Positions 8,459-55,953 of a DNA stretch of 64,000 bases are shown piece by piece. This DNA comes from Macrostomum lignano. Taxonomy: Eukaryota. A program made the position numbers and the translations under genes. Numbering within the stretch: position 1 is the stretch's first letter; the number at the start of each line of letters is the position of its first letter. The notes beneath the pieces were generated by a model, which searched no databases, was not told the origin of the DNA, and was given only the letters and a program-made list of their open reading frames with translations. The stretch spans positions 124,001 through 188,000 of the forward strand of contig NIVC01001141.1 in assembly GCA_002269645.1 (NCBI GenBank), in the 5' to 3' direction.

Positions 8459-9361
8459 CGCCTGCTGACCTGGTCCGATCGTGCGGTTTAACATTTCTAG
8501 AATGTACTTTTTACCCCACTATTATTACTGTCTTCATATTTTCTGCTCGCATTACATCGCTAGAAAGTTCAGCCACCCCACAATAGTCATATCAGTGCTC
8601 ATTACATTTTTTAGTTAAATTCATGAAGCTGGTACAGTATAAAATATAACCCAGTTGTAGTATGATTCTAATGGAATATTGAATTGACTGATGGCTTTTA
8701 TTTCTCGAGTTTTCATTGCTTTATAGACAGACAAAAATCACGAGGTTACGTCAAACGGATTTTCACAGCACTATTAGCGCATGCAGTTAAACAATATTTT
8801 GCTCTGTAACGATAAACATTGGGCGGCGGGCAGGTAGAGGTCAAATGTGGATAGTTGGCAGTCATTTCGGAAGCTGGGGGGGATAACAGCTGAGTCTTCT
8901 CATAAATATATTAAAATGCTTAGTTTACTAATCAACTGAAAGTAGCTTACTCGCATATTCGAGAGTGGCCCAATTTGTTTAAGTTTGCTGGTCCCCATAT
9001 AGTGGACATACTCTATACGTCCCCATGCAAACGGGGCTGATTAGTGCTGGCGTGAGAAGTGCAGCAGCGTCCTACACCTGAGCAGTCCCCGCTCAAGCAA
9101 TGGCCAAAAAGTTAAATGAAATACAAACAGAAAACAATTGGAAAATCTTTTAGTCTGTCTAGAGAGTCTAATTATATAAGGATTAAAATTGGAACATTAT
9201 CATTAATTTACCGCATAGTAAAACAAATCAAAACAGTATTGAAAAGTTAATCAGACAGCAGGAGGCTGCAGAAGAAGCAAACATCTCAACTTGAATCATC
9301 GGGGCGGCATCAGCGGGCACGGAGCTTGCGGGGGCCGCAGCAGCGTGCAGCCAGGGCCCGG

Positions 9362-12300
9362 CTAGGACTTCTTGAACCGCTTCAACTGGCGATTCGGCTT
9401 CAGCTGCGGGTCGATGACGGGCTTGGCGGGCAGCACGGCCGGGGCGGCGGACGGCACGTCATCGTCTGGGAGGCAGCGAGCTGGGGAGTCCCCAGAAACC
9501 CTGACTGCACTGCGCCGGGTGGCCGTGAGCATTCGGCGGACCTGCTTGCCGCAGGTCATCTGCCACTCCTGCTCCACCCTGCTCTTGTCCAGGTTGCGGA
9601 ACATCTTGCGAATCTCCTGCAGGTTGGCGCCCTCGGAAGGCGGTGGCCCAGCACGAAGATGGTGAGGTTGTTGCGCGGCTCGAAGACGCGGCCGTAGCCG
9701 TCCTGCACCGTGAAGCCGCCATTGTCAAGCGCAAACTTGTCAATGAGGTGCTTAGAGAGGCTGAGGCGCTCCCAGCTGGGGGCATCGTCCCACCTGGGGA
9801 AGGTGACGAAGAACCAGCAGTTCTCATCGCCAGTGTCCAGATAGTCCAAAATCCTTGAGGCCACCCGGTCCATCATGGCCTCGATGAAGGGTGGGTTCAC
9901 ATGCCAGCCGCCGTGGCACTTGGAGAAGTCCACCTTGAAGAAGCTGCCCATGCTGCCGAACTCCTCGTCAGTGTCGATGAAGAGGCTGCAGAAGCGAGAG
10001 TCCGCCTTGTCGATCATCTTGGAGTTCAGAGGAGACGCGAAGCCCTCGTACCGAACTCCCATGAGGTCATGCAGTGCATTGTGCACCGTGATGGGGTCGC
10101 CCCACTGCAGACTGCCGGTGCCCAGCGCCTCGTACCTGATCAGCATCCTGGTGGCTGGCAGCAGTCCGAAGTTGCGCACCAGGAACTTCACCCGCCAGCA
10201 GTGCTTGGACTTGAAGTCGCCCAGTGTCACGTGAGCTGCATCTTCGCTGTCCTCAATCAGCTCTATGCGGAGGTCGCTTGTGTCTTCGTCCCTGCCATCG
10301 TCCTTCAGGAACTTGCGCAGTCGCTGCTCCAACTGACCAAAGATGGTCCTGGCGTTCTCCCTGTCCGAGCTGAACTTCTTCTCCACGCACTCGTCGATCA
10401 GCTTCTGGTTCACCGAGTCCTCCTCGCTCAGGCTTTGCGGAAACAGCGGGTAGCGCGAGTCCATGCTGCCATCGTAGTCCAGCTGGAAGGACAGCAGCCA
10501 GCGGTCCAGCATGTTCTGCGCCTCCGAAAGGTTCTTATCCGCTGTGTGGTACATCCTGCCGTCTCCCTTCAGGAAGACGTCCACCAAGGAGCGGGCGAAG
10601 CGCCACTGCCGCAGCTCCGTCAGGTGCTTCTCTGTGGGCTCGGACTCATCAAGCAGTGGGGAATGCCTTCTTTTGAGTCTGTTCCGGAGATCCGCGGTGT
10701 TGCCCGTCTCATGGCCGTCGGTCTTGGCAGCTCTGTGCCGGCTGGGCTTGAGGATTACACGGAGCTGCTTGCTGCAGGTCATCCGCCACTCCTCCTCCAC
10801 CATGTGCCGGTTGAGGTTGCGGAACATCTTGCGAATCTCCTTTAGGTTGGCATCATCGGGCAGGCGGTTCCCCATCACGAAGATGGTGAGGTTGTTGCGG
10901 GGCACGAAGATGCGGCCGTAGCAGTCCTGCACCGTGAAGCCGCCGTCGTCCAGCTCGATCTGGTCGATGCGGCGCTTGGAATCACTGAGACGCACCCAGC
11001 CGGGGGTGTCATCCCACCTGGCGGATGTTTAGGCGATGGGAAAAAATACAATTTAGAGGTGTAAGAAAAAAAAGTTTCTGACGTAGATAAGAAATCCCCT
11101 TAGTGAGTTAGAAGCAATCAAATCCGATTTGACCATCGAATTCCTATCTAAATAAAATTCATTCGGCCGCAAGAAGGCTTCGACTTGGAGAAAAACTGAA
11201 GCAGACCAGCACATTCCTCTACTAAAAGTAGCGAGGATCGGGTATAGACAGAATTTTGGCATGCTTTGAAATCTGCCATGAATGTTAACTAAGCAAAGGT
11301 CGCCACCTCAGAGATTTCTGAGCTAGAAGCGCACTTGCTTAGCTGTACTGTGTGGACAGGTCGCTCAAACTACGAGTACAGGTGTAAAACGAGTAAATTG
11401 GTAATTCCTAGTGCAATGCAGAGACAGCAATTTTTATTCCAGTATCTGAGATACACTGGTAATTTAACTGCATCAGTTTCACAGAGTCACTCCACTTCTA
11501 GCTCGTAAATACCCTCAGAATTTGCGCTTAATGTTGTGGAAGGAGAGCTCCCTTCAGGCCAAGAGACATCCCAACAATAGTGTCCCAGTTGTGGCTCTCA
11601 AATCCTGGGATTATTGGGCGGCAGATCGTCCCGAATTAAGTGCTCAAATCCCAGGAGCAATAGCTGGGAAACGATCCCGAACAGAGTGCTTGAATCCCTG
11701 GATCAGTTGCTGGTGAGGATCCCAAAAAGGCTCAAATACCGGGATCAGTGGCTGGTAAGGATCCCAATTCCAAAATAGGCTTAAATACCGGGATCAGTGG
11801 CTGGTAAGGATCCCAAATAGGCTTAAATACCAGGATCAGAGGCTGGTAAGGATCCCAAATAGGCTTAAACACCGGGATCAGTGGCTGGTGAGGATCCCAA
11901 ATAGGCTCAAATACCGGGATCAGTGGCTGGTAAAGATCCCAAATAGGCTCAAATACCGGGATCAGTGGCTGGTAAAGATCCCAAATAGGCTCAAATACCG
12001 GGATCAGTGGCTGGTGAGGATCCCAAATAGGCTCAAATACCGGGATCAGTGGCTGGTAAAGATCCCAAATAGGCTCAAATACCGGGATCAGTGGCTGGTA
12101 AAGATCCCAAATAGGCTCAAATACCGGGATCAGTGGCTGGTAAGGATCCCAAATAGGCTTAAATACCGGGATCAGTGGCTGGTAAGGATCCCAAATAGGC
12201 TTAAATACCGGGATCAGTGGCTGGTAAGGATCCCAAATAGGCTTAAATACCGGGATCAGTGGCTGGTAAAGATCCCAAATAGGCTCAAATACCGGGATCA

Positions 12301-15300
12301 GTGGCTGGTAAGGATCCCAAATAGGCTTAAATACCGGGATCAGTGGCTGGTAAGGATCCCAAATAGGCTCAAATACCGGGATCAGTGGCTGGTGAGGATC
12401 CCAAATAGGCTCCAATACCGGGATCAGTGGCTGGGAGAGGATCCCAAATAGAGTGCTCAAATACCGGGATCAGTGGCTGGTGCGGATCCCAAATAGGCTC
12501 AAATACCGGGATCGGTGGCTGATGAGGATTCTGAGTTGATCCGGGACTGCTAAGTATGATTAAAAAGGTTGCTGGTGGAACAAAACGCTGAGCGCTCTCA
12601 ACAGTCGAACCTGGGGAAGGTGACGAAGAACCAGCAGTTCTCATCGCCAGTGTCCAGGTAGTTCAGCACCTTGGTGGCCACCCGGTCCATGAGCTCCTCG
12701 ATGAAGGGCGGGTTGACCGTCCATCCACCGTGGCACTTGGAGAAGTCCACCTTGAAGAAGCTGCCCATGCTGCCGAACTCCTCGTCAGTGTCGATGAAGA
12801 GGCTGCAGAAGCGAGAGTCCGCCTTGTCGATCATCTTGGAGTTCAGAGGAGACGCGAAGCCCTCGTACCGAACTCCCATGAGGTCATGCAGTGCATTGTG
12901 CACCGTGATGGGGTCGCCCCACTGCAGACTGCCGGTGCCCAGCGCCTCGTACCTGATCAGCATCCTGGTGGCTGGCAGCAGTCCGAAGTTGCGCACCAGG
13001 AACTTCACCCGCCAGCAGTGCTTGGACTTGAAGTCGCCCAGTGTCACGTGAGCTGCATCTTCGCTGTCCTCAATCAGCTCTATGCGGAGGTCGCTTGTGT
13101 CTTCGTCCCTGCCATCGTCCTTCAGGAACTTGCGCAGTCGCTGCTCCAACTGACCAAAGATGGTCCTGGCGTTCTCCCTGTCCGAGCTGAACTTCTTCTC
13201 CACGCACTCGTCGATCAGCTTCTGGTTCACCGAGTCCTCCTCGCTCAGGCTTTGCGGAAACAGCGGGTAGCGCGAGTCCATGCTGCCATCGTAGTCCAGC
13301 TGGAAGGACAGCAGCCAGCGGTCCAGCATGTTCTGCGCCTCCGAAAGGTTCTTATCCGCTGTGTGGTACATCCTGCCGTCTCCCTTCAGGAAGACGTCCA
13401 CCAAGGAGCGGGCGAAGCGCCACTGCCGCAGCTCCGTCAGGTGCTTCTCTGTGGGCTCGGACTCATCAAGCAGTGGGGAATGCCTTCTTTTGAGTCTGTT
13501 CCGGAGATCCGCGGTGTTGCCCGTCTCATGGCCGTCGGTCTTGGCAGCTCTGTGCCGGCTGGGCTTGAGGATTACACGGAGCTGCTTGCTGCAGGTCATC
13601 CGCCACTCCTCCTCCACCATGTGCCGGTTGAGGTTGCGGAACATCTTGCGAATCTCCTTTAGGTTGGCATCATCGGGCAGGCGGTTCCCCATCACGAAGA
13701 TGGTGAGGTTGTTGCGGGGCACGAAGATGCGGCCGTAGCAGTCCTGCACCGTGAAGCCGCCGTCGTCCAGCTCGATCTGGTCGATGCGGCGCTTGGAATC
13801 ACTGAGACGCACCCAGCCGGGGGTGTCATCCCACCTGGCGGATGTTTAGGCGATGGGAAAAAATACAATTTAGAGGTGTAAGAAAAAAAAGTTTCTGACG
13901 TAGATAAGAAATCCCCTTAGTGAGTTAGAAGCAATCAAATCCGATTTGATCATCGAATTCCTATCTAAATAAAATTCATTCGGCCGCAAGAAGGCTTCGA
14001 CTTGGAGAAAAACTGAAGCAGACCAGCACATTCCTCTACTAAAAGTAGCGAGGATCGGGTATAGACAGAATTTTGGCATGCTTTGAAATCTGCCATGAAT
14101 GTTAACTAAGCAAAGGTCGCCACCTCAGAGATTTCTGAGCTAGAAGCGCACTTGCTTAGCTGTACTGTGTGGACAGGTCGCTCAAACTACGAGTACAGGT
14201 GTAAAACGAGTAAATTGGTAATTCCTAGTGCAATGCAGAGACAGCAATTTTTATTCCAGTATCTGAGATACACTGGTAATTTAACTGCATCAGTTTCACA
14301 GAGTCACTCCACTTCTAGCTCGTAAATACCCTCAGAATTTGCGCTTAATGTTGTGGAAGGAGAGCTCCCTTCAGGCCAAGAGACATCCCAACAATAGTGT
14401 CCCAGTTGTGGCTCTCAAATCCTGGGATTATTGGGCGGCAGATCGTCCCGAATTAAGTGCTCAAATCCCAGGAGCAATAGCTGGGAAACGATCCCGAACA
14501 GAGTGCTTGAATCCCTGGATCAGTTGCTGGTGAGGATCCCAAAAAGGCTCAAATACCGGGATCAGTGGCTGGTAAGGATCCCAATTCCAAAATAGGCTTA
14601 AATACCGGGATCAGTGGCTGGTAAGGATCCCAAATAGGCTTAAATACCAGGATCAGAGGCTGGTAAGGATCCCAAACATACATGCGCAACAGTCGGCCGA
14701 GTCGGCCGATCCGGCCGACTGATTTGGCAGCCAACCAAGGAAGTCGCAAAAAATGCCCACCCAAAAAATACCCACGCAGTAGTACTAAGTAGCTGACGAG
14801 GCATTTTTGCCTGATAAGACAGTCATAGTTACTCCCGCCGTTTACCCAAAGTTGCGTTAATTTTGCTTTAGGGTTTTTTTACATGTAAGTCGCATTTTTG
14901 GCCAAAAACTACGTCGCATTTTTGTTAAAACTAAGTCGCACGGCCGACCGAATTTTGGACGTTGCGCATGTATGATCCCAAATAGGCTTAAACACCGGGA
15001 TCAGTGGCTGGTGAGGATCCCAAATAGGCTCAAATACCGGGATCAGTGGCTGGTGAGGATCCCAAATAGGCTCAAATACCGGGATCAGTGGCTGGTAAAG
15101 ATCCCAAATAGGCTCAAATACCGGGATCAGTGGCTGGTGAGGATCCCAAATAGGCTCAAATACCGGGATCAGTGGCTGGTAAGGATCCCAAATAGGCTCA
15201 AATACCGGGATCAGTGGCTGGTAAAGATCCCAAATAGGCTCAAATACCGGGATCAGTGGCTGGTAAGGATCCCAAATAGGCTTAAATACCGGGATCAGTG

Positions 15301-16704
15301 GCTGGTAAGGATCCCAAATAGGCTTAAATACCGGGATCAGTGGCTGGTAAAGATCCCAAATAGGCTCAAATACCGGGATCAGTGGCTGGTAAGGATCCCA
15401 AATAGGCTTAAATACCGGGATCAGTGGCTGGTGAGGATCCCAAATAGGCTCAAATACCGGGATCAGTGGCTGGTGAGGATCCCAAATAGGCTCAAATACC
15501 GGGATCAGTGGCTGGTAAGGATCCCAAATAGGCTCAAATACCGGGATCAGTGGCTGGTGAGGATCCCAAATAGGCTCCAATACCGGGATCAGTGGCTGGG
15601 AGAGGATCCCAAATAGAGTGCTCAAATACCGGGATCAGTGGCTGGTGCGGATCCCAAATAGGCTCAAATACCGGGATCGGTGGCTGATGAGGATTCTGAG
15701 TTGATCCGGGACTGCTAAGTATGATTAAAAAGGTTGCTGGTGGAACAAAACGCTGAGCGCTCTCAACAGTCGAACCTGGGGAAGGTGACGAAGAACCAGC
15801 AGTTCTCATCGCCAGTGTCCAGGTAGTTCAGCACCTTGGTGGCCACCCGGTCCATGAGCTCCTCGATGAAGGGCGGGTTGACCGTCCATCCACCGTGGCA
15901 CTTGGAGAAGTCCACCTTGAAGAAGCTGCCCATGCTGCCGAACTCCTCGTCAGTGTCGATGAAGAGGCTGCAGAAGCGAGAGTCCGCCTTGTCGATCATC
16001 TTGGAGTTCAGAGGAGACGCGAAGCCCTCGTACCGAACTCCCATGAGGTCATGCAGTGCATTGTGCACCGTGATGGGGTCGCCCCACTGCAGACTGCCGG
16101 TGCCCAGCGCCTCGTACCTGATCAGCATCCTGGTGGCTGGCAGCAGTCCGAAGTTGCGCACCAGGAACTTCACCCGCCAGCAGTGCTTGGACTTGAAGTC
16201 GCCCAGTGTCACGTGAGCTGCATCTTCGCTGTCCTCAATCAGCTCTATGCGGAGGTCGCTTGTGTCTTCGTCCCTGCCATCGTCCTTCAGGAACTTGCGC
16301 AGTCGCTGCTCCAACTGACCAAAGATGGTCCTGGCGTTCTCCCTGTCCGAGCTGAACTTCTTCTCCACGCACTCGTCGATCAGCTTCTGGTTCACCGAGT
16401 CCTCCTCGCTCAGGCTTTGCGGAAACAGCGGGTAGCGCGAGTCCATGCTGCCATCGTAGTCCAGCTGGAAGGACAGCAGCCAGCGGTCCAGCATGTTCTG
16501 CGCCTCCGAAAGGTTCTTATCCGCTGTGTGGTACATCCTGCCGTCTCCCTTCAGGAAGACGTCCACCAAGGAGCGGGCGAAGCGCCACTGCCGCAGCTCC
16601 GTCAGGTGCTTCTCTGTGGGCTCGGCTGACTTGACGCTGGGCTCGGACTCATCAAGCAGTGGCTGGCGCTTTAGTTTGAGTTTGTCTCTGAGATCGGTGG
16701 CCAT
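9362..16704 (-). CDS. PCIF1/CAPAM-like N6-adenosine methyltransferase with three tandem catalytic units and no WW domain (~1269 aa, 3 exons)
   Basis: Exons 15776-16704, 12611-13834 and 9362-11017 are joined by phase-2 GT-AG introns (CCCAG|GTTCG ... CCGCCAG|GTGG). Each unit has LDRWLL, SLQWG, EGFASPLNS, FCSLFIDTDEEFGSMGSFF and the NPPF motif, as in PCIF1 (ECFASPLN..YCSAFPDTDGYFGSRG..NPPF). One 1-nt frameshift near 9637. Confidence 0.85.
11705..12530. repeat. 42-bp minisatellite in intron 2 of the PCIF1-like gene
   Basis: (GGATCCCAAATAGGCTCAAATACCGGGATCAGTGGCTGGTAA)n. Confidence 0.95.
14525..15695. repeat. Same 42-bp minisatellite in intron 1 of the PCIF1-like gene, interrupted by a MITE
   Basis: Same unit and flanks as 11705-12530. 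Confidence 0.95.
14677..14974. mobile_element. MITE, 298 bp, 14-bp TIR CATACATGCGCAAC, 8-bp TSD ATCCCAAA (hAT- or P-like)
   Basis: Perfect TIRs and TSD; the empty site is visible in the paralogous intron near 11850; second copy at 27892-28190. Confidence 0.93.
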
Positions 16705-17496
16705 TTGCTTGAGACGATGATGTCAGAGTTTTATTCAGCTTTCTGACTCGCTTTTTAATTTAAAACGTAAAACAGAAAACAAATTATCTGCTAAATCCGG
16801 AAGCCTCAGTTTTCATTTTTCGTTTTCATTCTTGTCGTTGCTTGCCTTCTTCCTTTAATAGGTTCAATGTACAAGCCAGGCCCTACCCTCAGCCCTGTCA
16901 GCCTCTCACTGCTGGCCCGCGGGGAGAGAAATGAAGCCCAATGCCTCGACTCTTTTTAGAAACCCCCTTGCCCGTGCACAAATGTACACTCTGCCCTGCG
17001 TCAATGTACATTATTTTCCCTGTCCCCCGCCTTCCCAGCGCTAAATGACTGTACACACAGAAAGAACGCCTCTCTCCACAGCCTGACTCGCTAGACAAAG
17101 CCTTAGAAGTAAAGCCAACTAACCTTACATTCAGCAGGGGCCTGTCTTCTGCTCAAGAACTACTAATACTGAATACTCGTATATACAAATACAAGCTATA
17201 GTAGGGCTCCAACCAACTAAAGAGAAGTTTCTATCTATCGAGTTAAAGCAAAATATAAATATTTAAAATCTAAAGCAAAATCAAATAATAAATATTTCAC
17301 TTTGCGGCTTCTAATCCAACCAAAAGTCAAGGACTACTTAAGTATATATATGCGTTACTTTAGTCATCCTTGCCAAAAGTACTTCAGATTTAATAAATGA
17401 GTTTGTTTGCGAAACATTCTAGTGCCTTTATGATCGAACGGTGCAAGTTTCATGAAAATCTTTTGAGCCTTTTAAAAAATAAGTTTAGTACATGCA

Positions 17497-18105
17497 CTTG
17501 GGAGCCAGTCCACTGAAGCACTGGGGAGCCAGTCCACTGAAGCACTGGGGAGCCAGTCCACTGAAGCACTGGGGAGCCAGTCCACTGAAGCACTGGGGAG
17601 CCAGTCCACTGAAGCACTGGGGAGCCAGTCCACTGAAGCACTGGGGAGCCAGTCCACTGAAGCACTGGGGAGCCAGTCCACTGAAGCACTGGGGAGCCAG
17701 TCCACTGAAGCACTGGGGAGCCAGTCCACTGAAGCACTGGGGAGCCAGTCCACTGAAGCACTGGGGAGCCAGTCCACTGAAGCACTGGGGAGCCAGTCCA
17801 CTGAAGCACTGGGGAGCCAGTCCACTGAAGCACTGGGGAGCCAGTCCACTGAAGCACTGGGGAGCCAGTCCACTGAAGCACTGGGGAGCCAGTCCACTGA
17901 AGCACTGGGGAGCCAGTCCACTGAAGCACTGGGGAGCCAGTCCACTGAAGCACTGGGGAGCCAGTCCACTGAAGCACTGGGGAGCCAGTCCACTGAAGCA
18001 CTGGGGAGCCAGTCCACTGAAGCACTGGGGAGCCAGTCCACTGAAGCACTGGGGAGCCAGTCCACTGAAGCACTGGGGAGCCAGTCCACTGAAGCACTGG
18101 GGAGA
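17497..18105. repeat. 24-bp minisatellite (CCAGTCCACTGAAGCACTGGGGAG)n, about 25 essentially identical units
   Basis: Visible perfect tandem array. Confidence 0.97.
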
Positions 18106-18931
18106 CGGCCCCTCTGAAGTCCCGGAATCCAGCCCACCGAAGTCCATTGTGAAGCAATGATAACTATCTGGAGTTTAAGATTCCTCTCAGTGCCATGTTA
18201 AAATATCTGGGCCAGTTCTACAAAGCCATCGTAACATAAGATTGTTCTTATTTCCGCAGTGTAAAAGTTCCGACGAACGATCGAACTTACGCTACGACAG
18301 CTTTATAGTGGACCCCTCCGAGTGTAGAGTGAATGAGTTAAGAGAAGTCGCCGCTCGCTAGAGGTGCTACATTTGACTCTTCCATGTGCATATTCGTAGC
18401 TGTAATTGCATTATGTGACCGCATAATGTCTGCCTGTTGGGTTCTAATAAGTTCACAAAGTACCTGCCAAAAAGCGCAGCAAAAACCACATAAACCCAGC
18501 AACGAGAACGCATTCCATTAATTATTGGCTCAGGTATGATTGTCCAGGAAGCCACACTAGATATTCTGTCAAGTAGTAAAGCTGATCAGTTGCAGAGCTC
18601 TCACAGAGGCGCCAGCAACTCCGAGTTTATTTCGATATGATTAATAATTAATGCACAGTTACAGCCATACAATTCATTTTTACTAGCTGAAAATGCCGAA
18701 TAAAGCAGAGCAAAGCGAAGGAATCTGGGAGAAGCAGGTCAGCGCCAAAGGCATGCACCTGCCTATAACTAACTATAAGAACAAGCGGTGCAAATATCAG
18801 CCCCAGTTATACATTGTGGGCCGTCACAGGTAAACCAAAATCGTCAACCGAATGCAGCCGGTAAGACAAAAACATACAATTGCTGAACAGACGCAATAAA
18901 GGAGGATCAGCACCGGTCAGACAGCAGCCAG

Positions 18932-20521
18932 TCAGTTGCCATGCTGGGCGAAGAACTCCCTGGCCGCGGCGCACCTGGGATTTGTGCACAGCGGGCAGCG
19001 CAGCTGGAACTGCGAGCTGACGGTGCAGCCCTCGGCCAGGTGCTGCAGCACCAGGTCGGCCAGCGCAGACACGAAGGTCGGACTGTCGTTGAGAGCCTCG
19101 GAGCGGAGGACGCGGGCGCCGAGGTCGCCGGCCAGTTTGCCTGCGTATTCGACGTCCAGCTCGTACAGCGTCTCGATGTGGTCGCTGGTGAAGGCGATGG
19201 GCACCAGAACCAGCTGGTCGCGGCCGCGCTTCACCAGGCCGCGGATGGCCTCCTCCGTGCTGGGGCCCAGCCAGGGCAGCGGACCCACCTTGGACTGCCA
19301 GACCAGCCGGTACGGCACGCTGCCGGGGCCCAGCGCCTGCGCCACCATATGGGCGGTGACGGCCACCTCAGCCGGGTACGGGTCGCCCCGGTTCACCACC
19401 GACATGGGCAGCGAGTGGGCGGAGATCAGCAGCGCGCAGCGGGCCCGTTCCTCCGGCCCCAGCCTATCCAGCTCTGGCCGAACCCGCTCGGCCACGGCGG
19501 CCACGAAGCCAGCGTGCGCCGGCCAGCGGTCGATGAGCGACCAGCGCTGAATGCTGCTGGCCCCGCTGCGCTTGCGGTAGTACGCGGCCAGCGCGTTGAA
19601 GGAGCTGCCGCTGGTGCTGCAGGAGTACTGCGGGTACTGTGAGAAGGCGATCGCGTGCTGCACGCCGTCCCGCTCCATCGCCTCCACGGCGTCCTCCAGC
19701 AGCGGCCGGGCGTAGCGGAAGCCAACGTAGTGGCGATGCGGCGCCGATCCCGGGCTCAGCCGGTCCAGCTGAGCCGTCATGGCGCGGCCCTGCGGGTTTG
19801 GGGATAATTCTCCCATGGTCAGCTTTCATGGCTGGTCAGCTCCTACGAAGTCTGACATGCTGGAAAGTTATTTACGATACATATCGGCACCCGAACAGTG
19901 ATATATAAGAGAGATCGCTTACTGAAGAGAAGCAAGGAAACAATTTGAAGCGAATCTCTTATAGGGTGTGCAAAAGGTTGCGCACTGATGGATAAACAGA
20001 AATTTGACGCGTGTGTCTTTGAGCTGGCAAAGAGAACTCAGACACTGGTCCTGGCCAATCGTGAGTCCGAGTCTCGCACTTGGACACATGCAGAAGCTCA
20101 TATGTGGAATGCCAAGCCAGTATCGCTAGAAAATTTGCATCCACTCACCGAATACTAAGATTGAAGCTAAACAAAAGCTAAAACTGTCCCCTGAGCGGGG
20201 ACTCACCTGAGCCTCAGTCCACTTGAGGATTGGGCTGCCGCCGCCAATGCGGTAGTACTGCTCCCTGATGGCCGGGGTGCGCCTCCTGGCGATGTACTTA
20301 GACAGCCGAGACTGTGCGGGCAGCGGGATCAAGTCCCCGTCACTGAACAGGCGGTGCAGAAAGTCGCCAACATCGTCCAGTGTCTCCGGCCCGCCCATGT
20401 TCAGCATGAGGATGCCGGTCTTGGGAGGCTGCGCGCCGCCGCTGGTGGAGCTGAGAAGACGGCGGCCAGAGGCGGTCAGACGGGCCAGCCGCCCAGAGGA
20501 CAGCAGCGGCAGCAGCGGCAT
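18932..20521 (-). CDS. FECH: Ferrochelatase, mitochondrial (2 exons: 20207-20521, 18932-19789; 390 aa)
   Basis: [73 protein letters not shown] and the C-terminal CPLC...C Fe-S motif; Arg/Leu/Ser-rich presequence; canonical splice sites. Confidence 0.97.
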
Positions 20522-20787
20522 AGGAAGAGGCTGCGGAGCGATCGAACAGACTACTGCTAGTAGGGAGTAAAAGTTATTGAAGTTAAATTCTAAGAACAAA
20601 AAGCAGAAAATTAACAAGAACAAAAAATAAAAAGCGAAACAACAGAAAATTGTTCTAGCAGCAAAGGTCTGCACGCAGAAAATGCAGTGTAGGGTGCATT
20701 TTATTGGTAGAACAAGCTAGCAATCAATGATAACACATTAGGCTGCAAAGTAACTGGGCTGTTGCCAGTGAAGCTACAAATTAAAAG

Positions 20788-27734: not shown

Positions 27735-28715
27735 GGGAGCACGAGAAATGCCTGCGGACGAATTTCCTGCCGAGATTTGCCCGTCGGGATTTGCCCGCCG
27801 AGCTTTTCCCACAGTGCATTTTGCCCGTGAGCGAATTGCCCACCGAGGTTTGCCCGCAGTGCATTTTTCCTACAGCGCATTTGGCCACGCGCATACATGC
27901 GCAACAGTCGGCCGAGTCGGCCGATCCGGCCGACTGATTTGGTGACCAACCAAGGAAGTCGCAAAAATGCCCACCCGAAAAAATACCTAAGTAGTAGTAC
28001 TAAGTAGCTGACGAGGCATTTTGGGTTAATAAGACAGTCATAGTTACTCCTGCCGTTTACCCAAAGTTGCGTTAATTTTGCTTTAGGCTTTTTTTTACAT
28101 GTAAGTCGCATTTCTGGCCAAAAACTATGTCGCATTTTTGTTAAAACTAAGTCGCACGGCCGACCGAATTTTGGAGGTTGCGCATGTATGGCCACGCGGC
28201 AGATTTTGTCTGCATTGCCTCCCCCAATGCTTAGTAAGTCTTAATAAAGAGATTTACACGATCAAATGTTTTGATGGTAGCTGCATATCAAATGCATATT
28301 AAGTTTTATTATTAATTTTTATTATTAATAATCTACATATTATTCATTTTTTTGGGGGGAGGGGGCATTGCAGACAGAATCTAGCTGCCAAATGCGCTGC
28401 AGGAAAAAAAGCATTGCGGGCAAATCTCCACGGGCAAAATGCACTGCTGGCAAATCTCGGCGGGCAAAATGCACTGCTGGCAAATCTCGGCGGGCAAAGC
28501 TCCACGGGCAAAATGCACTTCTGGCAAATCTTGGTGGGCAAAGCTCCACAGGCAAAATGCACTGCTGGAAAATCTTGGCGGGCAAATCTCCATGGGCAAA
28601 ATGCACTGCTGGCAAATCTTGGCGGGCAAATCTACACGGGCAAAATGCACTGCTGGCAAATCTCGGTGGGCAAAGCTCGGCGGGCAATTCATCTGTGGGC
28701 AATTCTCATGGACCC
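27735..28715. mobile_element. Foldback-type non-autonomous DNA element with long imperfect, internally repetitive inverted arms and a probable 9-bp TSD (ATATTTACT/ATATTTACC)
   Basis: Left arm GGGAGCACGAGAAATGCC.. mirrors right arm ..GGCAATTCTCATGGACCC; TTTGCCC/GGGCAAA subrepeats are inverted between arms. Confidence 0.75.
27892..28190. mobile_element. Second copy of the CATACATGCGCAAC MITE (299 bp), 8-bp TSD GCCACGCG, nested in the foldback element
   Basis: Perfect 14-bp TIRs and TSD; highly similar to 14677-14974. Confidence 0.93.
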
Positions 28716-30899
28716 ATATTTACCATATGCACTATAGCACATTAAAATTAGAAAAAACTAAGCACGAATTATGCCAGATAAAAAGTATGATCTACTAGTT
28801 AAAAAACATTTTCAAGTGGCATGGTAACAAAGTTCATAGAATTCCTAATGACTTCAGAATTATAAGCCATCTTCATCAGATCCAAATGCATTTGGATTCA
28901 TTTGGGGGGGGGGCATTTTCTACACATTTTCTACATATAAAACTGACTATTGCATCTAGTAAGCCATTTGCAACATAGCATTTTCTTTATATGCAAAATT
29001 TTCTTTTTTAGCTTCAAATACTTAATTTTTATCTATTATAGATATAGATATAGCTACTAGCTACATATATAAACTATTAGATGTTGTAGATGTAGAGGTT
29101 TTTAGATAGAACATAATTTAGAAGTATGGTTATAGGAATATTTATTTTTTATGTTTAGTTCTCATACATAGTAAATATTAAAGCTAAAGCTTATCAATAA
29201 TTGAATAACTTTATAACTTTAATAAATTTATAATCCAATAACATTGACTTAAAAGATCATGCAAGCCTACTTGATGCTAACTTAATCTATCAAGTCAAGA
29301 CTACTAATACTAGTAAAAATATTAGTGCTTATAAAAGTCTGTCTAGTAAAAAAGATTTTTTAAAATCTGAAATTTTGATAACATTACTTTATAATGGTAG
29401 GCCAAGTTATTTAGTTGGCTATTATTTCTTATCTTTTCTAAAGAAAAAAAATTGTCTACTTTCTTTTTCAATATAAGGCAAATGCCAACAAGGTCATCTC
29501 CAAAATAAATAGGCCCTAGCAACTAAGATAACAACCCACAGTTGCCTAAATTACTTTGCCTTATACTTAACCTACTCAATTACAATTATTATCTTGGAAA
29601 ATATAAGTTAGGCCTAACCTTTATTATTTTACTATATAAGAAAAACTATAGACAACATCTAAAGCATACTTTTGAAATTTTCTAAAGCGTGCTGCATTCA
29701 AAAGCATGCAATGTCTATCTATGCCTCATGCCTAAACTGCCTTTTCCTGCTAGCTACTGCTCCAGAAAATAAATATATGGCAGTTATAATAAACTTAGTT
29801 TTTTGTTTTTATTTTAGAAAATTTTAATTTTGATTTTGAAGGTTAGCAAATTTCAATATCAACAAAAATTGCTCTTTTCGTCTTTTGGAACATCTCTAAT
29901 AATTTAAAGTGCAATAAAATATTTTGCCTCTATTCTGAAGTATTTATGGATACGAATATTATAAATACTAAAATACTATAATAGCAAAATTGTTATTTTT
30001 ATTTAGTCAATGTATACAACATGCACTTACTTGTACTGGGCTTAAGGTTTAAACTTAAATTTAGCCATAAAAATAGCGAAACTGTTATTTCTATAATTCT
30101 ATAGTCACTGTACAATGTGCATTAGAAACAAAAGGCCTAACTTTTATGGTCATGAGGAGAAATTTCATTTACATTAATAGTTTTTACATTAAGTAATCTA
30201 GCTAAGGTCAGTGACCAAAACGTTGTGTTGCGAGAAGTGCTACACTGACCTAACCTCAGGTGTGATGAACATAATTTATAAGTATTTGAAATTTAAATGT
30301 AGGTTAGGTTTTGATAAACAGGTTTCAATTCTCTCTCTCGAGTCTCTTTGAGTCTTTTTTACATTTTAAGAAATATTTTAATTTTCAAAATAAAAAGAAG
30401 TGTAAAAAATGAAAATATTATCTGTTAAAACAAACAACACACGCGTTGTGCCTAAATTTTAAAATTATTACAACGGTTAACTCATTTAAGAAAAATATCT
30501 ATACTTTAAATAATATTTGCTTATCTACACGACTACTTAAAATACACGATAAATAAATGTAACGTGCAGCGCTCACGTTTACGGTTGCATATTTTTCCTC
30601 TTAACCATAATTTGCATGCAAAGAAGACCTATGTCGCCCTTTTTGTTTTCATCTTGCTAAGCAAAAAGTTACATGATATTTAATTTTTCACATTAAGCAT
30701 TAATTATTCTTTCTGACCGCGACTTTTACATGTGACTCTTACATGTACACTGGGATCCATTAGAAATATACGTCGACTGACTATTTTGAAAAGCAAAGTA
30801 CGCTAATAGTAAAGAATAGCATCAGACAGAGTGCTTATGCCTGAAATCGAGGTGTCCATAGGGACAAAAAAGCTTTTATTACAAATTTTACAAATTTTA

Positions 30900-31317
30900 C
30901 AAATTTTTATACTCCATTTTAATTATGAACATGCACAATTGGTAAAAATTAAGAATACGCTCGTAATTAACTTAAATAACTTAAGAAAAGGAACTCTGAA
31001 AGGAGTTAATATAAACAAAAATCAACGAAAAATAAAATCAATTTTATTGTTGATTAATCGTTCCCATTGTCTTAAATTCAAGGTGTCACGCGAACAAACA
31101 AGTACTACATCTAAATATGACAAAACTCAATATTATTTGCGACGCGTTTCGGCTAAAACTAGCCATCTTCAGGCACTATCGAACAGAATTTATTTCAACT
31201 TATTAAATACTGTGTAGACGACAAAATCAGGTATTGAAAAGATATAAAAGGACTAAAGGATCAATGTACAGTATAGCAATGTTCATAATATTTTTTTGTG
31301 GAATGACAGGACAGAGA

Positions 31318-31379
<62 letters not shown>

Positions 31380-31985
31380 GCGTATGCGCCCCAAATGTAC
31401 TCTAGCTTAGAACACCAACAGCCGTTCACTCGCACCTCCTCCAGATAGTTGGACATTGAGAATGGGTTTGTGTAACTTAATGTGCAGAGCTTCAAGAATG
31501 TTAAGTTTATGCTCATTTTTGCTGTTGTCTATGACCTTGAAATGAGAGGTTATGTCTGGCTCATCACAACAACCATGGCATTGCAGCAAATGTTCCTGAA
31601 TCGGAGAGTTTCGTTGTCTATGTTCCTTGGCTCTCGTGAGTAGGTGTCGCTTGGTTTTACCAATGTAGGTAATGCTCTGGTCAACAGAGCAACGAAAACG
31701 ATAGATGACACCTGCCTTGAGAGCACATGGAACACGAGACTTTAAACTGCCAACGAATTGACTGACTTTATGAGTACGGAACACTACATGAATCTTAGTC
31801 TTAAAGAATTTTTGGCAAGTTTTGCGAATTTGCCTCTTAAACACAATCGAAGAGTTGCCCAAAAACGGAAGAGTCAAGATTGGTTCTCCTGGTTCTCTAT
31901 CTGGCCGTTTAGGTTTAAGCTTTTTTTCAATTTTTTCATCTAAGAAATTACCAATAACCTTCATGATGTAGTTAATAGGGTATCC
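30900..31985 (-). mobile_element. 5'-truncated Penelope-like retroelement (GIY-YIG endonuclease end plus 3' region)
   Basis: ORF 31407-31964: ILTLPFLG, AGVIYRFRCSVDQSITYIGKTKRHLLTRAKEH, LNILEALHIKLHKPILN; hammerhead motif downstream. The 3' boundary is approximate. Confidence 0.9.
31138..31175 (-). ncRNA. Minimal type I hammerhead ribozyme of a Penelope-like element
   Basis: Minus strand: UGC CUGAAGA U GGCUA-GUUU-UAGCC GAAA CGCG UC GCA = 3-bp stem I, core, perfect 5-bp stem II, GAAA, palindromic ACGCGU stem III, GUC cleavage triplet. Confidence 0.88.
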
Positions 31986-32039
31986 ATTGGCAGTGAGAAT
32001 ATTGATAATGTATTAATATATATCAATATTCTCACTGCA

Positions 32040-41590: not shown

Positions 41591-43434
41591 CTCGCTTATG
41601 CTTTCTTAGTAATTGTTGTTGATGAAGTCTCATCAAATCGCTAGATCATTGAAATAGCGATTCTGTTTACAGTAAATACGATGATGTAAATACGATTTTG
41701 TTTACAAAGTCATTAACCGATTTCGTTGTTAATGCTGTGTTTAAATAGACTTTGAGGTTTTTTATGGACAGTTTATGCCATGCAGCTTTTTGTGAGCTCA
41801 CCAAGCCTCTTAGTACATGTACCCGAGCTGATAAGTATTTGCTTTGAAAGTTTTGCGTCTGCAAAAGCCTGATTGTGTAGCAAATACTGGCTTCCAAAAC
41901 CTGGAAATGTGCTCAGCTTCTTATCGCTACTCTGTCTACAATTTGATCATTATGAGTCTCCAAACACAGCTCGATTGCAGATTTTACTGAATTATCGGTA
42001 TTTCATACACACAATATAAGCTATTTAGTAGTAGCGGAGGCCGCCGAAATTATGCCCAGAACCGTCACAGCGCATTTGCACTGCCACAATGTGCTGTACT
42101 CAAAAGGAATGAATTTATACAAGGTACATCCGTCAATTTCAGGTCGTTTCCATGCTTGCATATCTATATTAGCTAAATTTTCCTTAACTTTTCCAGAACC
42201 TTCTCTACTGCTTTCAGTGAGTCTTTGCTGGTGTAAAAACAATTAAATCTTCCAGTCAAACGGCTCGCCAGCATCCGAGTTGCATCGGGCCCTCACAGCT
42301 CTGCTCAGCTCGAGAGCAATGAGCATCTGTAGCGCTCATCCCTCTGTCTGTGCCGTTCTCAACAGTTGCATCTGCATCGCGGTTTTCTTTCATTTCGATT
42401 TGCAACCCAGCAGTCTGAAGTGCCTCATTGTTTCAGCTGGTAGCCCTGCTGCAGTCAACTGAAAACTGTAGCCACTGCCAGCGCCAACCCTCCGCTGCTC
42501 TTTCCTCTCCACCGCTCATTCTCTCCCGCGCGTACGCAGCAAGAAAGTGCGAGAGCAGCCAGGCAGAGCGCAGAGAGGAGGGCAGGCAGGCAGGCAGGCA
42601 GGCAGTCCACCCTGTCTCTGGGTGGCGGGGGGGGGGGCAAAGTACAAGCAAGCGCGCGGCCACCCCATGGATGGCGGCGCATAAGAGCCACCCTGCGCTC
42701 CCGCTAACGCTCGTAAGCTCAGCGCAGGTATTCAGCTCCACTGGCACAAGGATATCGCAAAAAAATTAATTATGTAAGTTTTCACGCTCTCTAAAATTTC
42801 AAAATAACGCCCGAATCGGTCATTTCAAGCCTTGCAGTAGCGCGCCATTCAGAAATCGGCAACTTTAGTCAGCATTGACGCGCTTGTTAATTGTTAATTC
42901 AGTAAATCCTATGGATAGAAATGTGCAATTTTTTTGCTTTTCTACCTATATGAGAACTCAGATGGCAGAGCTGTCGGGCCTTTTGTAGTGAAGACAATTT
43001 TACCACCTACATTACTGAATGGTTAATTACTGTACATAAGTTACATTTAGCTCATGATGAGTAAAACCCATGAATTACAGGGTTAATTAAGCACATTCAG
43101 TAGATTATCATTTTATCTATTTTTAAATGGCAATTTCTCAAGAATTAAATCTTTTCTATAATTTTCAACAGATAGATAGTAAAGAACGAGTCACAAAACT
43201 TCTACAAGGCACCAAAATATTTCAAACATTCTACTGACAGTAGCAAACCTGGGCAGCAAGCGCTAAACATATCTGAATTATGCAAGCTAAAATTGCACAC
43301 AAAGTGAGATACATGTAGCAGCAGCGAGCCTTGTTGATTTTACTTAGCCCTACTAAAAGATATCCCTGTCGAAACATTTGGAACTCTACATCGAAACTAC
43401 CAAACCTGGTTCATTCAGATCCAACCCTGCAGCC

Positions 43435-54587: not shown

Positions 54588-55953
54588 GGGCAAGCCCCTT
54601 GGCCCCCACTCTGGCAAATGTCTGCTTGGCCCACTGGGAAACCAAAAATTGGATGTCTCTTAACTATGCCCCCAAATTCTACAGGCACTACATCGATGAT
54701 ACGTTTGCTATCTTAAATTTGATCAGGAGCAAAAAATTGATCAGTTCCTCCACGGCCCACGCTCTCAACTCCACTCATAAGAACATCAAATTCACGGTTG
54801 AACATGCTGTTGACCAGACTCCTATTCCTGGACATTGGCATTGACTACAGACAGTAAGGAAACCCTCTCCACAAAAGTCTTCCATAAGAAAAGCTTTACC
54901 AATCTCATTCTCAATTTCCAAGCCACTTGCCCCAGACAATGGAAAACTGGGCTTGTGAGGTGTTTGCTCCATAGGCATAGAGCTTTCACTACCTATAACA
55001 CCTGGATCAACTTTGACTGGGAGGTGCAGTTCCTTACCAGACTGTTCTATCAAAATGACTACCCCGTTTGTCTGGTTCAAAAAATCATCAACAAGTTCAT
55101 CTCGGACAAAATCACCAAACAAAAACCTAAGCAATCTGTTACCACTGAAGAATTTGAACCCATTCTGCGTCTCCCCTTCCTCGGACCTCCATCTCTAGCC
55201 TTGAAAAACAGAATGCATAGGTTATTCTTTGCCTCTTTCAATAGTAATATCCAGGTTGTCTTCTACATAAACAAGATTGGAAACTTTGTTAGCAGATTAA
55301 AGTTGCGTGTTCCTCGTACTCTGTGTGCAGGTGTTGTTTACCAATTTAACTGCTCTGTGGACCAGAGCGTCTCCTACGTGGGGAAAACCAAAAGACACCT
55401 ACACACGAGGATCAGGGAACACTGGCTCAAACCACCTGCTATACAAACTCACCTCTTTGAATGCACTAACTGCAATGACTGCAAACCAGAAGAACACTTT
55501 AAAATCATTGACCAAAGCCATACTGATGCCAAACTTAGAATTCTCGAGGCCCTACACATAAAAGCTCAGTCCCCAAATCTCAACACCCAATTACAACATA
55601 ATGGTGCAGGTCACGTTCTCTGCGTTTTCTGAACAGTGAGTGACACAAACGTGTATGCTGTGTACACTTAACTTGACGTTCATTTACTTAAGCTACCACC
55701 CCTGATTCTGCCTTTTGACCACTGAACAAGAATTGTGTACTTTTGGTTTATTTTCAATCTTAATCTATAATTTTCTCTCCTACCTACCTATGTATGTTGT
55801 TAAAGCCAAGTTGTAATCAATTGTTTTCAATCTTACCCTCCTTATCTATGTACGTTGCAAAAACCAATATTTAATCAATTGTTTTCAATCTCACTTTCTC
55901 AAATTGTTCTAATAAAATCCTAACGATGCACAATGGTGTGCAAAGTTGTTAGA
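54588..55953 (+). mobile_element. 5'-truncated, frameshifted Penelope-like retroelement (RT C-terminus + GIY-YIG)
   Basis: SPLAPTLAN, YRHYIDDTFA (RT); LRLPFLG, AGVVYQFNCSVDQSVSYVGKTKRHLHTRIREH, LRILEALHIK..PNLN (GIY-YIG); short tandem repeats and a decayed hammerhead-like motif in the 3' region. Confidence 0.9.

What the first reader, a model, noticed from the sequence alone, without database searches (positions are those of the whole stretch)
9362..16704. One gene encoding three tandem PCIF1/CAPAM-like m6A methyltransferase domains, with no WW domain
Seen: what the ORF track shows as three separate ORFs splices into one ~1269-aa reading frame via two phase-2 GT-AG introns, giving three units each with an intact NPPF motif. 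Established: animal PCIF1 is a single-domain cap-specific m6Am methyltransferase recruited to Pol II by an N-terminal WW domain. Inference: a WW-less, triplicated enzyme must find its substrate differently. Candidates are spliced-leader caps, snRNA caps, multiple or processive methylation, or DNA. I am not aware of a described multi-domain CAPAM.
Basis: partly seen in the sequence, partly recalled or inferred. Interest (0 to 1): 0.88.

Follow-up and report, generated by a model that had tools for sequence, protein, structure and literature searches.

The report
Flatworm gene with three PCIF1-like domains
This is a gene of the flatworm Macrostomum lignano in which a very recent tandem duplication has strung three near-identical copies of a PCIF1/CAPAM-like RNA adenine methyltransferase into one reading frame; the architecture is real and unusual, but it is already in GenBank as a hypothetical protein, and the missing WW domain is normal for its subfamily.

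Summary
Three minus-strand ORFs each match Pfam PCIF1_WW (E 1e-25 to 1e-29). Two phase-2 GT-AG introns (15775-13835 and 12610-11018) join them in frame and rebuild the conserved FPR|WDD segment.

The window is Macrostomum lignano. A syntenic locus in assembly GCA_002269645.1 carries an RNA-seq-based 1283-aa model, BOX15_Mlig000263g6, with exactly these junctions.

The correction: a one-base homopolymer deletion near 9634 shifts the frame. The sequence as given yields 1204 aa (stop at 9556).

- The gene is not the animal PCIF1 orthologue. It belongs to a well-supported Macrostomum clade of short, WW-less PCIF1-like paralogues, whose wider relatives include proteins labelled viral.
- The triplication is very young. 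About 730 bp of coding DNA is identical in all three units, and the units evolve in concert.
- So neither trait need imply a new way of finding substrate.

An AlphaFold model (pLDDT 91) matches the CAPAM crystal structures, and NPPF is intact in all three units. The most likely function is SAM-dependent N6-methylation of RNA adenosine, independent of the Pol II CTD; this is untested. Novelty and interest are modest.

The parts
15776..16704 (-). Exon 1. Starts at the ATG (16704) and encodes unit 1: an N-terminal helical region plus the methyltransferase core with NPPF, up to ...FVTFPR. Ends after the second base of a codon.
   Evidence: In-frame stops lie upstream of the ATG. If the intron is retained, the frame stops three codons later (FDC*).
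13835..15775 (-). Intron 1 (1941 bp, GT...AG, phase 2). Contains a 42-bp minisatellite at 14974-15694 and a remnant at 14505-14676.
   Evidence: The equivalent intron in GenBank locus L001 is 1234 bp with the same junctions.
12611..13834 (-). Exon 2 (1224 nt, symmetric phase 2-2). Encodes the last strands and C-terminal helix that complete unit 1, a 19-aa linker, then unit 2 up to ...FVTFPR.
   Evidence: The invariant Trp303 and near-invariant Asp305 of the family lie just after the junction.
11018..12610 (-). Intron 2 (1593 bp, GT...AG, phase 2). Contains the 42-bp minisatellite at 11693-12529.
   Evidence: It is 99% identical to intron 1 outside the satellite.
9556..11017 (-). Exon 3 as it reads in the window. 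Encodes the completion of unit 2, a linker, and a full uninterrupted unit 3. After the frameshift come 26 out-of-frame residues, then the stop at 9556-9558.
   Evidence: Pfam match reaches profile position 168 of 176.
9631..9645 (-). Site of the one-base homopolymer deletion (CTTCCGAG here, CTTCCCGAG in L001) that shifts the frame of the C-terminal tail.
   Evidence: It is the only difference from L001 in about 430 nt of coding sequence.
9362..9633 (-). Conserved C-terminal tail (EGANLQEIRKMFRNL...KRFKKS, stop at 9362-9364). It is in frame only if the deletion is repaired, and it is intact in GenBank P0001.
9792..16625 (.). Extent of the genomic tandem repeat: unit A 9792-12608, unit B 12609-15773, partial unit C 15774-16625. 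Periods are 2817 and 3165 bp at about 99% identity.
   Evidence: self-BLAST; alignment.

Best explanation
The locus is a single Macrostomum lignano gene for a WW-less, CAPAM-like (helical domain plus Rossmann methyltransferase domain) adenine-N6 methyltransferase.

How it arose:
- A roughly 3-kb block has been amplified by unequal crossing-over to give three catalytic units in one ORF. The block holds a satellite-bearing intron plus an exon. That exon encodes the end of one unit, a linker, and most of the next unit.
- Two phase-2 GT-AG introns are removed to complete units 1 and 2. Unit 3 is uninterrupted.
- The units are kept identical by ongoing gene conversion and unequal exchange.

Where it belongs: the gene is one member of a Macrostomum expansion of a short PCIF1-like subfamily. 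That subfamily is distinct from canonical animal PCIF1, and its wider relatives include proteins labelled viral.

Inferred mechanism: each unit binds SAM and N6-methylates an RNA adenosine. By analogy with CAPAM this is most probably the cap-adjacent nucleotide. It would act without recruitment to the Pol II CTD. The three-fold repetition is a young copy-number or dosage-type event, not a new catalytic principle.

The copy in this window carries a one-base frameshift. It removes only the C-terminal helical tail of unit 3, and it may be an assembly error.
For: Shown:
- Pfam PF12237 matches all three ORFs, and P0001 has three matched stretches.
- Exact GT-AG junctions restore the conserved FPR|WDD segment. 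The family-invariant Trp303 lies after the junction, so units 1 and 2 are incomplete unless spliced.
- The GenBank CDS BOX15_Mlig000263g6 in syntenic locus L001 uses the same junctions and translates exactly to P0001. That annotation is RNA-seq-based and splits transcripts at spliced-leader or poly(A) evidence.
- The window and L001 are colinear at 96-98% identity and both have three units, with different intron lengths. This argues against an assembly artefact.
- Units are 100% identical over about 730 bp. One site is A in all three window units and C in all three L001 units, which is concerted evolution. The unit-3-specific 3' differences are shared by both loci.
- The internal and terminal C-terminal pieces differ by dS 0.37 with dN/dS 0.50 and no stop codons. 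An architecture of at least two domains is therefore older than the last amplification.
- The AlphaFold2 model has pLDDT 91.4 and pTM 0.89. Its top Foldseek PDB hits are all CAPAM structures (6IRW, 6IRV, 6IRX-6IS0; E 6e-15 to 3e-13), with a gap of ten orders of magnitude to the next hits.
- The family profile aligns to both the helical and methyltransferase domains of CAPAM.
- Subfamily placement rests.

Inferred: the substrate (RNA, cap-adjacent A), independence from the CTD, and the dosage-like meaning of the triplication.
Against: - I examined no transcript reads directly. The units are identical, so short reads cannot distinguish the exon 1-2 junction from the exon 2-3 junction. A genome-guided assembler could therefore overstate the number of units in the mature mRNA.
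- dN/dS of 0.5 over 96 codons is only moderate constraint.
- The window copy is frameshifted.
- No biochemical data exist for any member of this short subfamily, so cap specificity is extrapolated from vertebrate CAPAM at about 17-19% structural-alignment identity.
- Cap-pocket residues were not compared.
Confidence: 0.72

Rival explanations
1. Three separate genes or mRNAs. Each ORF is expressed on its own, through polyadenylation inside the 'introns' and/or spliced-leader trans-splicing at the acceptor sites, as in M. lignano operons.
For: M. lignano trans-splices about 30% of its genes and has operons (PMC8629364; PMC5730564). Trans- and cis-acceptor sites look alike. A stop codon follows the donor three codons later.
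Against: - Stand-alone units 1 and 2 would end at Pfam profile position 144 of 176. They would lack the invariant Trp and the last two beta strands of the fold.
- mRNAs starting at the acceptor would begin with an orphan C-terminal fragment, and the ATG at the end of the spliced leader would be out of frame (sequence).
- The TBONE pipeline, which cuts at spliced-leader and poly(A) evidence, left the syntenic gene as one 1283-aa model.
- The post-junction coding piece is conserved and open.
Confidence: 0.08
2. A neutral or decaying structural variant. The array is a recent accident of a highly repetitive, neopolyploid genome. The extra units add nothing selectable, and this copy is already on the way to being a pseudogene (frameshift).
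For: - Zero divergence among the units.
- Satellite-rich introns of variable length.
- A frameshift in the window copy.
- 180-312 Mb of the assembly is duplicated.
- At least five other paralogues could cover the function.
Against: - Two diverged loci both keep three open, motif-intact units.
- The frameshift is a single homopolymer base with no further damage downstream, which is typical of an assembly error.
- The older internal C-terminal piece has stayed open with dN/dS below 1.
- This rival overlaps with the best explanation: it disputes only adaptive value, not structure.
Confidence: 0.3
3. An assembly artefact. A one- or two-unit gene was over-expanded because of the 42-bp satellite and near-identical repeats.
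For: About 99% identical 3-kb repeats containing minisatellites are hard to assemble.
Against: A separate contig of GCA_002269645.1 (96-98% identical flanks) also has exactly three units. It has different intron lengths and locus-specific substitutions present in all of its units.
Confidence: 0.04
4. A transposon-derived or DNA-directed methyltransferase. The family would descend from the PCIF1-like methyltransferase domain of DIRS1-type retrotransposons, or would act on DNA (6mA).
For: The PCIF1 clade includes DIRS1 polyprotein methyltransferase domains (PMC4738411). The units are intronless internally, while the closest paralogue has four introns, which suggests a retrocopy-like origin.
Against: - DIRS1 methyltransferase domains are reported as catalytically degenerate, whereas NPPF and all family motifs are intact here.
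- Pfam found no reverse transcriptase or tyrosine recombinase domain in P0001.
- The neighbouring genes are ordinary animal genes: ferrochelatase and a CARMIL-like gene.
- The fold includes the CAPAM helical domain used for cap and RNA binding.
Confidence: 0.05

Closest known systems
Vertebrate PCIF1/CAPAM (human Q9H4Z3; PDB 6IRV, 6IRW, 6IRX-6IS0), the cap-specific m6Am writer
   Same: - Pfam PF12237 match and an NPPF catalytic loop.
- A Rossmann methyltransferase domain preceded by a helical domain.
- The only strong structural matches in the PDB (E about 1e-14).
- Shared motifs F-A-S-P-L-N, F-x-D-x-D-x-x-F-G-S and P-x-W.
   Different: - No WW domain and no long disordered linker.
- Each unit is about 355-400 aa, against 704 aa for human PCIF1.
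- Only 65.8 bits and a roughly 135-residue alignment by phmmer.
- Placed in a separate clade.
- Three catalytic units per polypeptide.
- Activity is untested.
GenBank hypothetical protein BOX15_Mlig000263g6 (P0001, 1283 aa; UniRef name 'PCIF1 WW domain-containing protein'), M. lignano assembly GCA_002269645.1, contig NIVC01002568.1
   Same: The same gene at a syntenic locus: the same three units, the same two splice junctions and 98% protein identity.
   Different: - The GenBank copy has no frameshift.
- It has the 7-aa SVKSAEP insert in all three units (only unit 1 has it here), which accounts for 14 extra residues.
- It has Ala instead of Asp at one site in all three units.
- Its introns are shorter (1234 and 1413 bp).
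- Whether it is an allele, a homeologue or a redundant contig is not determined.
Single-domain M. lignano paralogues (BOX15_Mlig021227g1 = P0168; A0A1I8HAP9 = P0010; BOX15_Mlig015920g2-4 = P0013; BOX15_Mlig030305g1 = P0015)
   Same: WW-less, 360-440 aa, with the same motif set. P0168 and P0010 are 48-54% identical to one unit and group with it in 51 of 51 bootstraps.
   Different: Each has one domain per protein. P0168 has four introns at other positions and none at the FP|W site.
Short PCIF1-like proteins of giant-virus-like and marine metagenomic contigs (for example P0067 'uncultured virus', 855-kb contig; P0174 'viral metagenome'), and their two-domain or fused forms
   Same: WW-less helical-plus-methyltransferase architecture, 27-35% identity across nearly the whole unit. 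Tandem two-domain versions exist.
   Different: - In the two-domain forms checked, only the C-terminal copy keeps NPPF or NPPY. Here all three copies are intact and identical.
- Others are fused to XRN, DEAD-box helicase or GT8 domains.
- They form the sister group, not the same clade.

Membership tests
PCIF1/CAPAM superfamily (Pfam PF12237) | Significant match to the PF12237 profile above the gathering score | tested here: met
   Scores of 90.9, 90.1 and 104 bits against a cutoff of 31.1 for the three ORFs. P0001 has three matched stretches and 304 bits.
PCIF1/CAPAM superfamily (Pfam PF12237) | Catalytic NPPF motif after strand 4 | tested here: met
   GGWTVNPPFIEE in units 1 and 2, GGWHVNPPFIEA in unit 3. 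N268, P269 and P270 are at least 90% conserved in the family alignment.
PCIF1/CAPAM superfamily (Pfam PF12237) | Rossmann methyltransferase domain plus helical domain, as in the CAPAM crystal structures | tested here: met
   AlphaFold2 pLDDT 91.4. The top six Foldseek hits are all CAPAM (E 6e-15 to 3e-13, TM-score on query about 0.5). The profile aligns to both the helical and methyltransferase regions. High global rmsd suggests a different orientation between the two domains.
Canonical animal PCIF1 (orthologue of human PCIF1) | N-terminal WW domain that binds the phosphorylated Pol II CTD | tested here: not met
   No PF00397 hit in any ORF or in P0001. No WW pattern within 3 kb upstream. Stop codons lie upstream of the ATG.
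Canonical animal PCIF1 (orthologue of human PCIF1) | Groups with metazoan PCIF1 in sequence comparison | tested here: not met
   65.8 bits to human PCIF1 against at least 95 bits to 150 short-form representatives. In the neighbour-joining tree, the vertebrate PCIF1 pair (together with P0211) is separated from all the other short forms in 51 of 51 replicates. Only two canonical sequences were available, so this is a rough test.
Canonical animal PCIF1 (orthologue of human PCIF1) | m7G-cap-dependent N6-methylation of the first transcribed Am | not testable with these tools
   Needs an enzyme assay or cap mass spectrometry.
Canonical animal PCIF1 (orthologue of human PCIF1) | Conservation of the residues that hold m7Gppp between the helical and methyltransferase domains | not tested
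   The residue list and a residue-level structural superposition were not available to me. The review describes the pocket only in general terms.
Tandem intragenic duplication under concerted evolution | Head-to-tail genomic repeats, introns included, with frame-preserving (symmetric-phase) repeat exons | tested here: met
   Periods of 2817 and 3165 bp at about 99% identity. Exon 2 is 1224 nt with phase 2-2.
Tandem intragenic duplication under concerted evolution | Units more alike within a locus than between loci | tested here: met
   Site 169 is A/A/A in the window and C/C/C in L001. The SVKSAEP insert is in one unit here and in three units in L001. This rests on few sites.

The most novel reading that the evidence does not exclude
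Macrostomum has a lineage-specific radiation of CTD-independent, CAPAM-like RNA methyltransferases related to enzymes found in giant viruses. On this reading the three-headed member is a functional multivalent enzyme. It might mark several adenosines, or several RNAs, in one encounter. It might act on a non-canonical substrate such as trans-spliced or TMG-capped RNAs, snRNAs, or transposon and viral transcripts. That would reveal a second, unstudied branch of cap-adjacent or internal m6A(m) writing in animals.
Probability: 0.12. Interest if true: 0.75.

Novelty: new variant of a known kind. Interest (0 to 1): 0.38.

Why it matters
PCIF1/CAPAM is the only known writer of cap-adjacent m6Am, and it has been studied almost entirely in vertebrates.

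This locus shows that an animal can carry a whole family of short, WW-less CAPAM-like genes outside the canonical orthologue. One of them has become a three-catalytic-domain protein through very recent intragenic amplification.

Two things follow.
- These short enzymes are compact helical-plus-methyltransferase units. They offer a tractable way to ask what CAPAM-like enzymes do when they are not tethered to Pol II, including in giant viruses.
- The locus is a clean, datable example of how a multi-domain enzyme is born: a symmetric-phase exon, new introns at the repeat junctions, and concerted evolution.

It does not, on present evidence, reveal a new mechanism.

Tried and rejected
- **Dinoflagellate origin.** I first suspected this from the GC content, the tandem units and the AG|G acceptors. 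The 98% match to M. lignano rejected it.
- **Hidden WW exon.** I found no WW pattern in 16650-19600 on either strand.
- **Repeated intron sequence.** I asked whether the intron is a repeated element elsewhere in the window. There are no copies outside 9300-16800. An introner or transposon origin could not be tested genome-wide.
- **Non-coding RNAs.** Rfam found nothing at gathering thresholds in the whole window.
- **Literature.** Searches for PCIF1 with Macrostomum, planarians, the locus tag or giant viruses found nothing relevant. One broad search was mis-specified and wasted.
- **First homologue search.** My query accidentally omitted exon 2, giving an 861-aa two-domain version. It still identified P0001.
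- **Canonical PCIF1 in M. lignano.** I ran no further search on human PCIF1. The hit list would be dominated by vertebrates, so whether M. lignano also has a WW-containing PCIF1 remains open.
- **Failed script.** One phylogeny script failed without returning output. I re-ran it in two smaller steps.


Full report
**What is in the sequence**

On the minus strand between 16704 and 9362 there are three long ORFs: 16704-15763 (313 aa), 13812-12598 (404 aa) and 10995-9556 (479 aa). Each matches Pfam PF12237 (PCIF1_WW). Despite its name, that profile covers the methyltransferase domain of PCIF1/CAPAM. The E-values are 9.6e-26, 1.6e-25 and 8.8e-30. In ORFs 1 and 2 the match breaks off at profile position 144 of 176, where the ORF ends in ...FVTFPRFDC-stop. 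In ORF 3 it continues to position 168.

- Exon 1 ends at 15776, and the intron runs from GT at 15775 to AG at 13835.
- Exon 2 spans 13834-12611, and the second intron runs from GT at 12610 to AG at 11018.
- Exon 3 starts at 11017.
- Exon 1 is 929 nt and exon 2 is 1224 nt, so both introns are phase 2 and exon 2 is symmetric.

Splicing produces FPR|WDDTPGWVRLS. This is the counterpart of the uninterrupted FPRWDDAPSWERLS in unit 3. In an alignment of 36 family members, the Trp just after the junction is invariant and the following Asp is at least 90% conserved. Units 1 and 2 are therefore incomplete unless spliced.

**The correction**

The window carries a single-base deletion at about 9634-9636 (CTTCCGAG). 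The internal repeat has CTGCCCGAT at that position, and the GenBank locus has CTTCCCGAG. As the sequence stands, the spliced frame ends at 9556 after 1204 aa, with 26 out-of-frame residues at its end. The deletion is the only difference from the GenBank locus in about 430 nt of coding sequence, and it sits in a homopolymer. An assembly error is as likely as a real mutation.

**Organism and prior record**

A homologue search returned a 1283-aa Macrostomum lignano protein, BOX15_Mlig000263g6, at 98% identity.
- Its gene lies on contig NIVC01002568.1 of GCA_002269645.1.
- That contig is colinear with the window at 96-98% identity.
- Ferrochelatase lies upstream and a CARMIL-like gene downstream.
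- Rebuilding that CDS from the DNA shows it uses exactly the same two junctions, with introns of 1234 and 1413 bp.

The annotation of that assembly was derived from RNA-seq using StringTie and TACO plus a mapped de novo transcriptome. A pipeline then cut transcripts wherever spliced-leader or poly(A) evidence existed (PMC5730564). That is indirect support for a single three-unit mRNA.

The caveat is that the units are identical. Short reads cannot tell the two junctions apart, so the number of units in the mature mRNA is not proven.

**The three 'domains' are a young genomic tandem repeat**

Self-comparison shows that 9792-11859 equals 12609-14676 at 99.1% identity. It also shows that 11809-13460 equals 14974-16625 at 99.0%, introns included.
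- Across about 730 bp of coding sequence, the three units have no differences at all.
- Unit 3 differs only in its last ~120 bp, at 19 sites. Both loci share those differences, so the three-unit array predates their split.
- One site is A in all three window units and C in all three units of the other locus.
- A 7-aa insert (SVKSAEP) is in one unit here and in all three there.

This pattern is concerted evolution by gene conversion or unequal exchange.

The introns carry a 42-bp minisatellite of variable length.

The internal C-terminal piece lies after each intron. It differs from the terminal C-terminal piece by dS 0.37 and dN/dS 0.50 over 96 codons, and it has stayed open. A version with at least two units is therefore older than the last amplification, and it has been under some constraint.

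The closest single-domain paralogue (P0168) has four introns at other positions and none at this site. The junction introns are thus specific to the repeated gene. How they arose I could not determine.

**What kind of enzyme it is**

An AlphaFold2 model of unit 3, built with 58 homologues, has pLDDT 91.4 and pTM 0.89.
- Its only strong PDB matches are the six human and zebrafish CAPAM structures (E 6e-15 to 3e-13).
- The next hits, generic methyltransferases, are around 1e-3.
- A family profile aligns to both the helical and the methyltransferase domains of CAPAM.
- The residues encoded after the splice junction form a helix and two strands at high confidence within the fold.
- NPPF and the other family motifs are intact in all three units.

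**Which branch of the family it belongs to**

It is not the canonical animal PCIF1.
- One unit scores 65.8 bits to human PCIF1 over about 135 residues.
- An exhaustive search of 1.84 billion representatives found 2381 relatives. The top 150 all score at least 95 bits, and most are 300-450 aa proteins matching nearly the whole unit.
- No WW domain was found in the 18 relatives scanned against Pfam.
- At least five further M. lignano paralogues are among them.
- The named non-flatworm members are labelled 'uncultured virus' (an 855-kb contig) and 'viral metagenome'.
- One high-scoring member sits in a dense array of ORFan genes typical of a large DNA virus.

In a neighbour-joining tree, the unit groups with P0168 and P0010 in 51 of 51 bootstraps. 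All the M. lignano paralogues, plus three sequences of unknown source, form a clade in 50 of 51. The vertebrate PCIF1 pair (together with P0211) is separated from all the other short forms in 51 of 51. This is a distance tree with only two canonical sequences, so it is indicative rather than definitive.

WW-lessness is therefore the normal state of this subfamily. The WW domain is in any case dispensable for catalysis in CAPAM (review PMC8287941).

**Multi-domain relatives**

Two-domain PCIF1-like proteins are frequent among the metagenomic relatives. In those I checked, only the C-terminal copy keeps NPPF or NPPY. Others are fused to XRN, DEAD-box helicase or GT8 domains. Among the 214 sequences retrieved, the Macrostomum protein is the only one with three copies. 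It is also the only multi-domain one in which every copy has its catalytic motif intact. That is the unusual feature. It is also the expected look of a duplication too young to have diverged.

**Most likely mechanism**

Shown:
- one gene, three complete CAPAM-like units after splicing, and a recent tandem origin.

Inferred:
- Each unit is a SAM-dependent adenine-N6 methyltransferase acting on RNA. By analogy with CAPAM's helical-plus-methyltransferase architecture, the target is probably the cap-adjacent adenosine.
- It acts without Pol II CTD tethering, as its likely viral relatives presumably also do.
- The triplication most likely acts as a dosage or copy-number change. Multivalent or processive action is possible but has no support yet.

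The published M. lignano spliced leader begins with C. This argues against the spliced-leader cap-adjacent nucleotide as the target.

**Rival explanations**

- Three separate mRNAs is unlikely. Stand-alone units 1 and 2 would be truncated folds, and the evidence-based annotation kept the gene whole.
- An assembly artefact is unlikely, because two diverged loci agree.
- A neutral or decaying variant cannot be excluded, and it overlaps with the main explanation.
- A DIRS1-type or DNA-directed origin has little support.

**Verdict**

The gene model is already public but is undescribed in the literature I could search. The interpretation over-reads both the missing WW domain and the triplication.

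I rate it a new architectural variant of a known enzyme family, of moderate interest. The broader point may be worth more than the triplication itself: an animal carries an expanded family of short CAPAM-like genes whose wider relatives include viral proteins.

Noticed in passing
window 9631-9645: A single-base homopolymer difference (CC versus CCC) from the GenBank locus shifts the frame of the last 66 codons. It is the only coding difference in the terminal 430 nt, so it may be an assembly error.
   Followed up: yes
window 11693-12529, 14974-15694, 14505-14676: A 42-bp minisatellite (17-20 copies, 92-95% matches) sits inside both introns. Intron lengths differ between the window (1941 and 1593 bp) and L001 (1234 and 1413 bp).
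   Followed up: partly
window 17494-18104: A nearly perfect 24-bp satellite (25.5 copies, 99%) lies between the ferrochelatase gene and the start of the PCIF1-like gene. It generates long spurious ORFs in four reading frames across both strands.
   Followed up: no
L002 4001-8530 (GCA_002269645.1, NIVC01000281.1): The closest single-domain paralogue, P0168, has four introns, none at the FP|W junction. The units of the three-domain gene are intronless internally. This hints that the amplified unit began as a processed (retro)copy and that the junction introns are new.
   Followed up: partly
proteins P0007, P0025, P0085, P0091, P0107, P0002, P0003, P0009 (metagenomic): A recurrent two-domain PCIF1-like architecture. 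In the five scanned for the motif (P0007, P0025, P0085, P0091, P0107), the N-terminal copy has lost NPPF while the C-terminal copy keeps NPPF or NPPY. This is a pseudoenzyme-plus-enzyme arrangement reminiscent of METTL14/METTL3.
   Followed up: partly
proteins P0008, P0204, P0205 (XRN), P0006 (DEAD-box helicase), P0004, P0005, P0028, P0082 (GT8); L003 8892-10999: Short PCIF1-like domains are fused to, or lie adjacent to, an XRN 5'-3' exonuclease, a DEAD-box helicase or a family-8 glycosyltransferase on virus-like contigs. The XRN fusion suggests a link to mRNA 5'-end metabolism.
   Followed up: no
M. lignano proteins P0010/P0158, P0168, P0013 (three gene copies), P0015, P0016, P0198, P0203: M. 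lignano carries an expanded family of WW-less PCIF1-like genes in two well-supported subgroups. Whether a canonical WW-containing PCIF1 also exists in this species was not determined.
   Followed up: partly
window 12611-13834: Exon 2 is 1224 nt with phase 2 at both ends. Skipping it, or losing or gaining a repeat unit, keeps the frame and would give two-domain or four-domain isoforms or alleles.
   Followed up: partly
window 18932-20674 (-), 43378-44139 (+), 60945-61802 (-), 54835-55632 (+), 28000-32000: Other content of the window:
- ferrochelatase in two exons;
- an ankyrin-repeat ORF;
- a class II aldolase/adducin-domain ORF;
- a weak, sub-threshold GIY-YIG match (E 4.6e-4) that might belong to a mobile element;
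- an AT-rich block (33% GC).
   Followed up: no
window 9901-10845, 12730-13662, 15895-16629 (+): Long antisense ORFs (244-314 aa) lie opposite each methyltransferase unit. They repeat with the units and are most simply a by-product of GC-rich codon usage on the coding strand.
   Followed up: no
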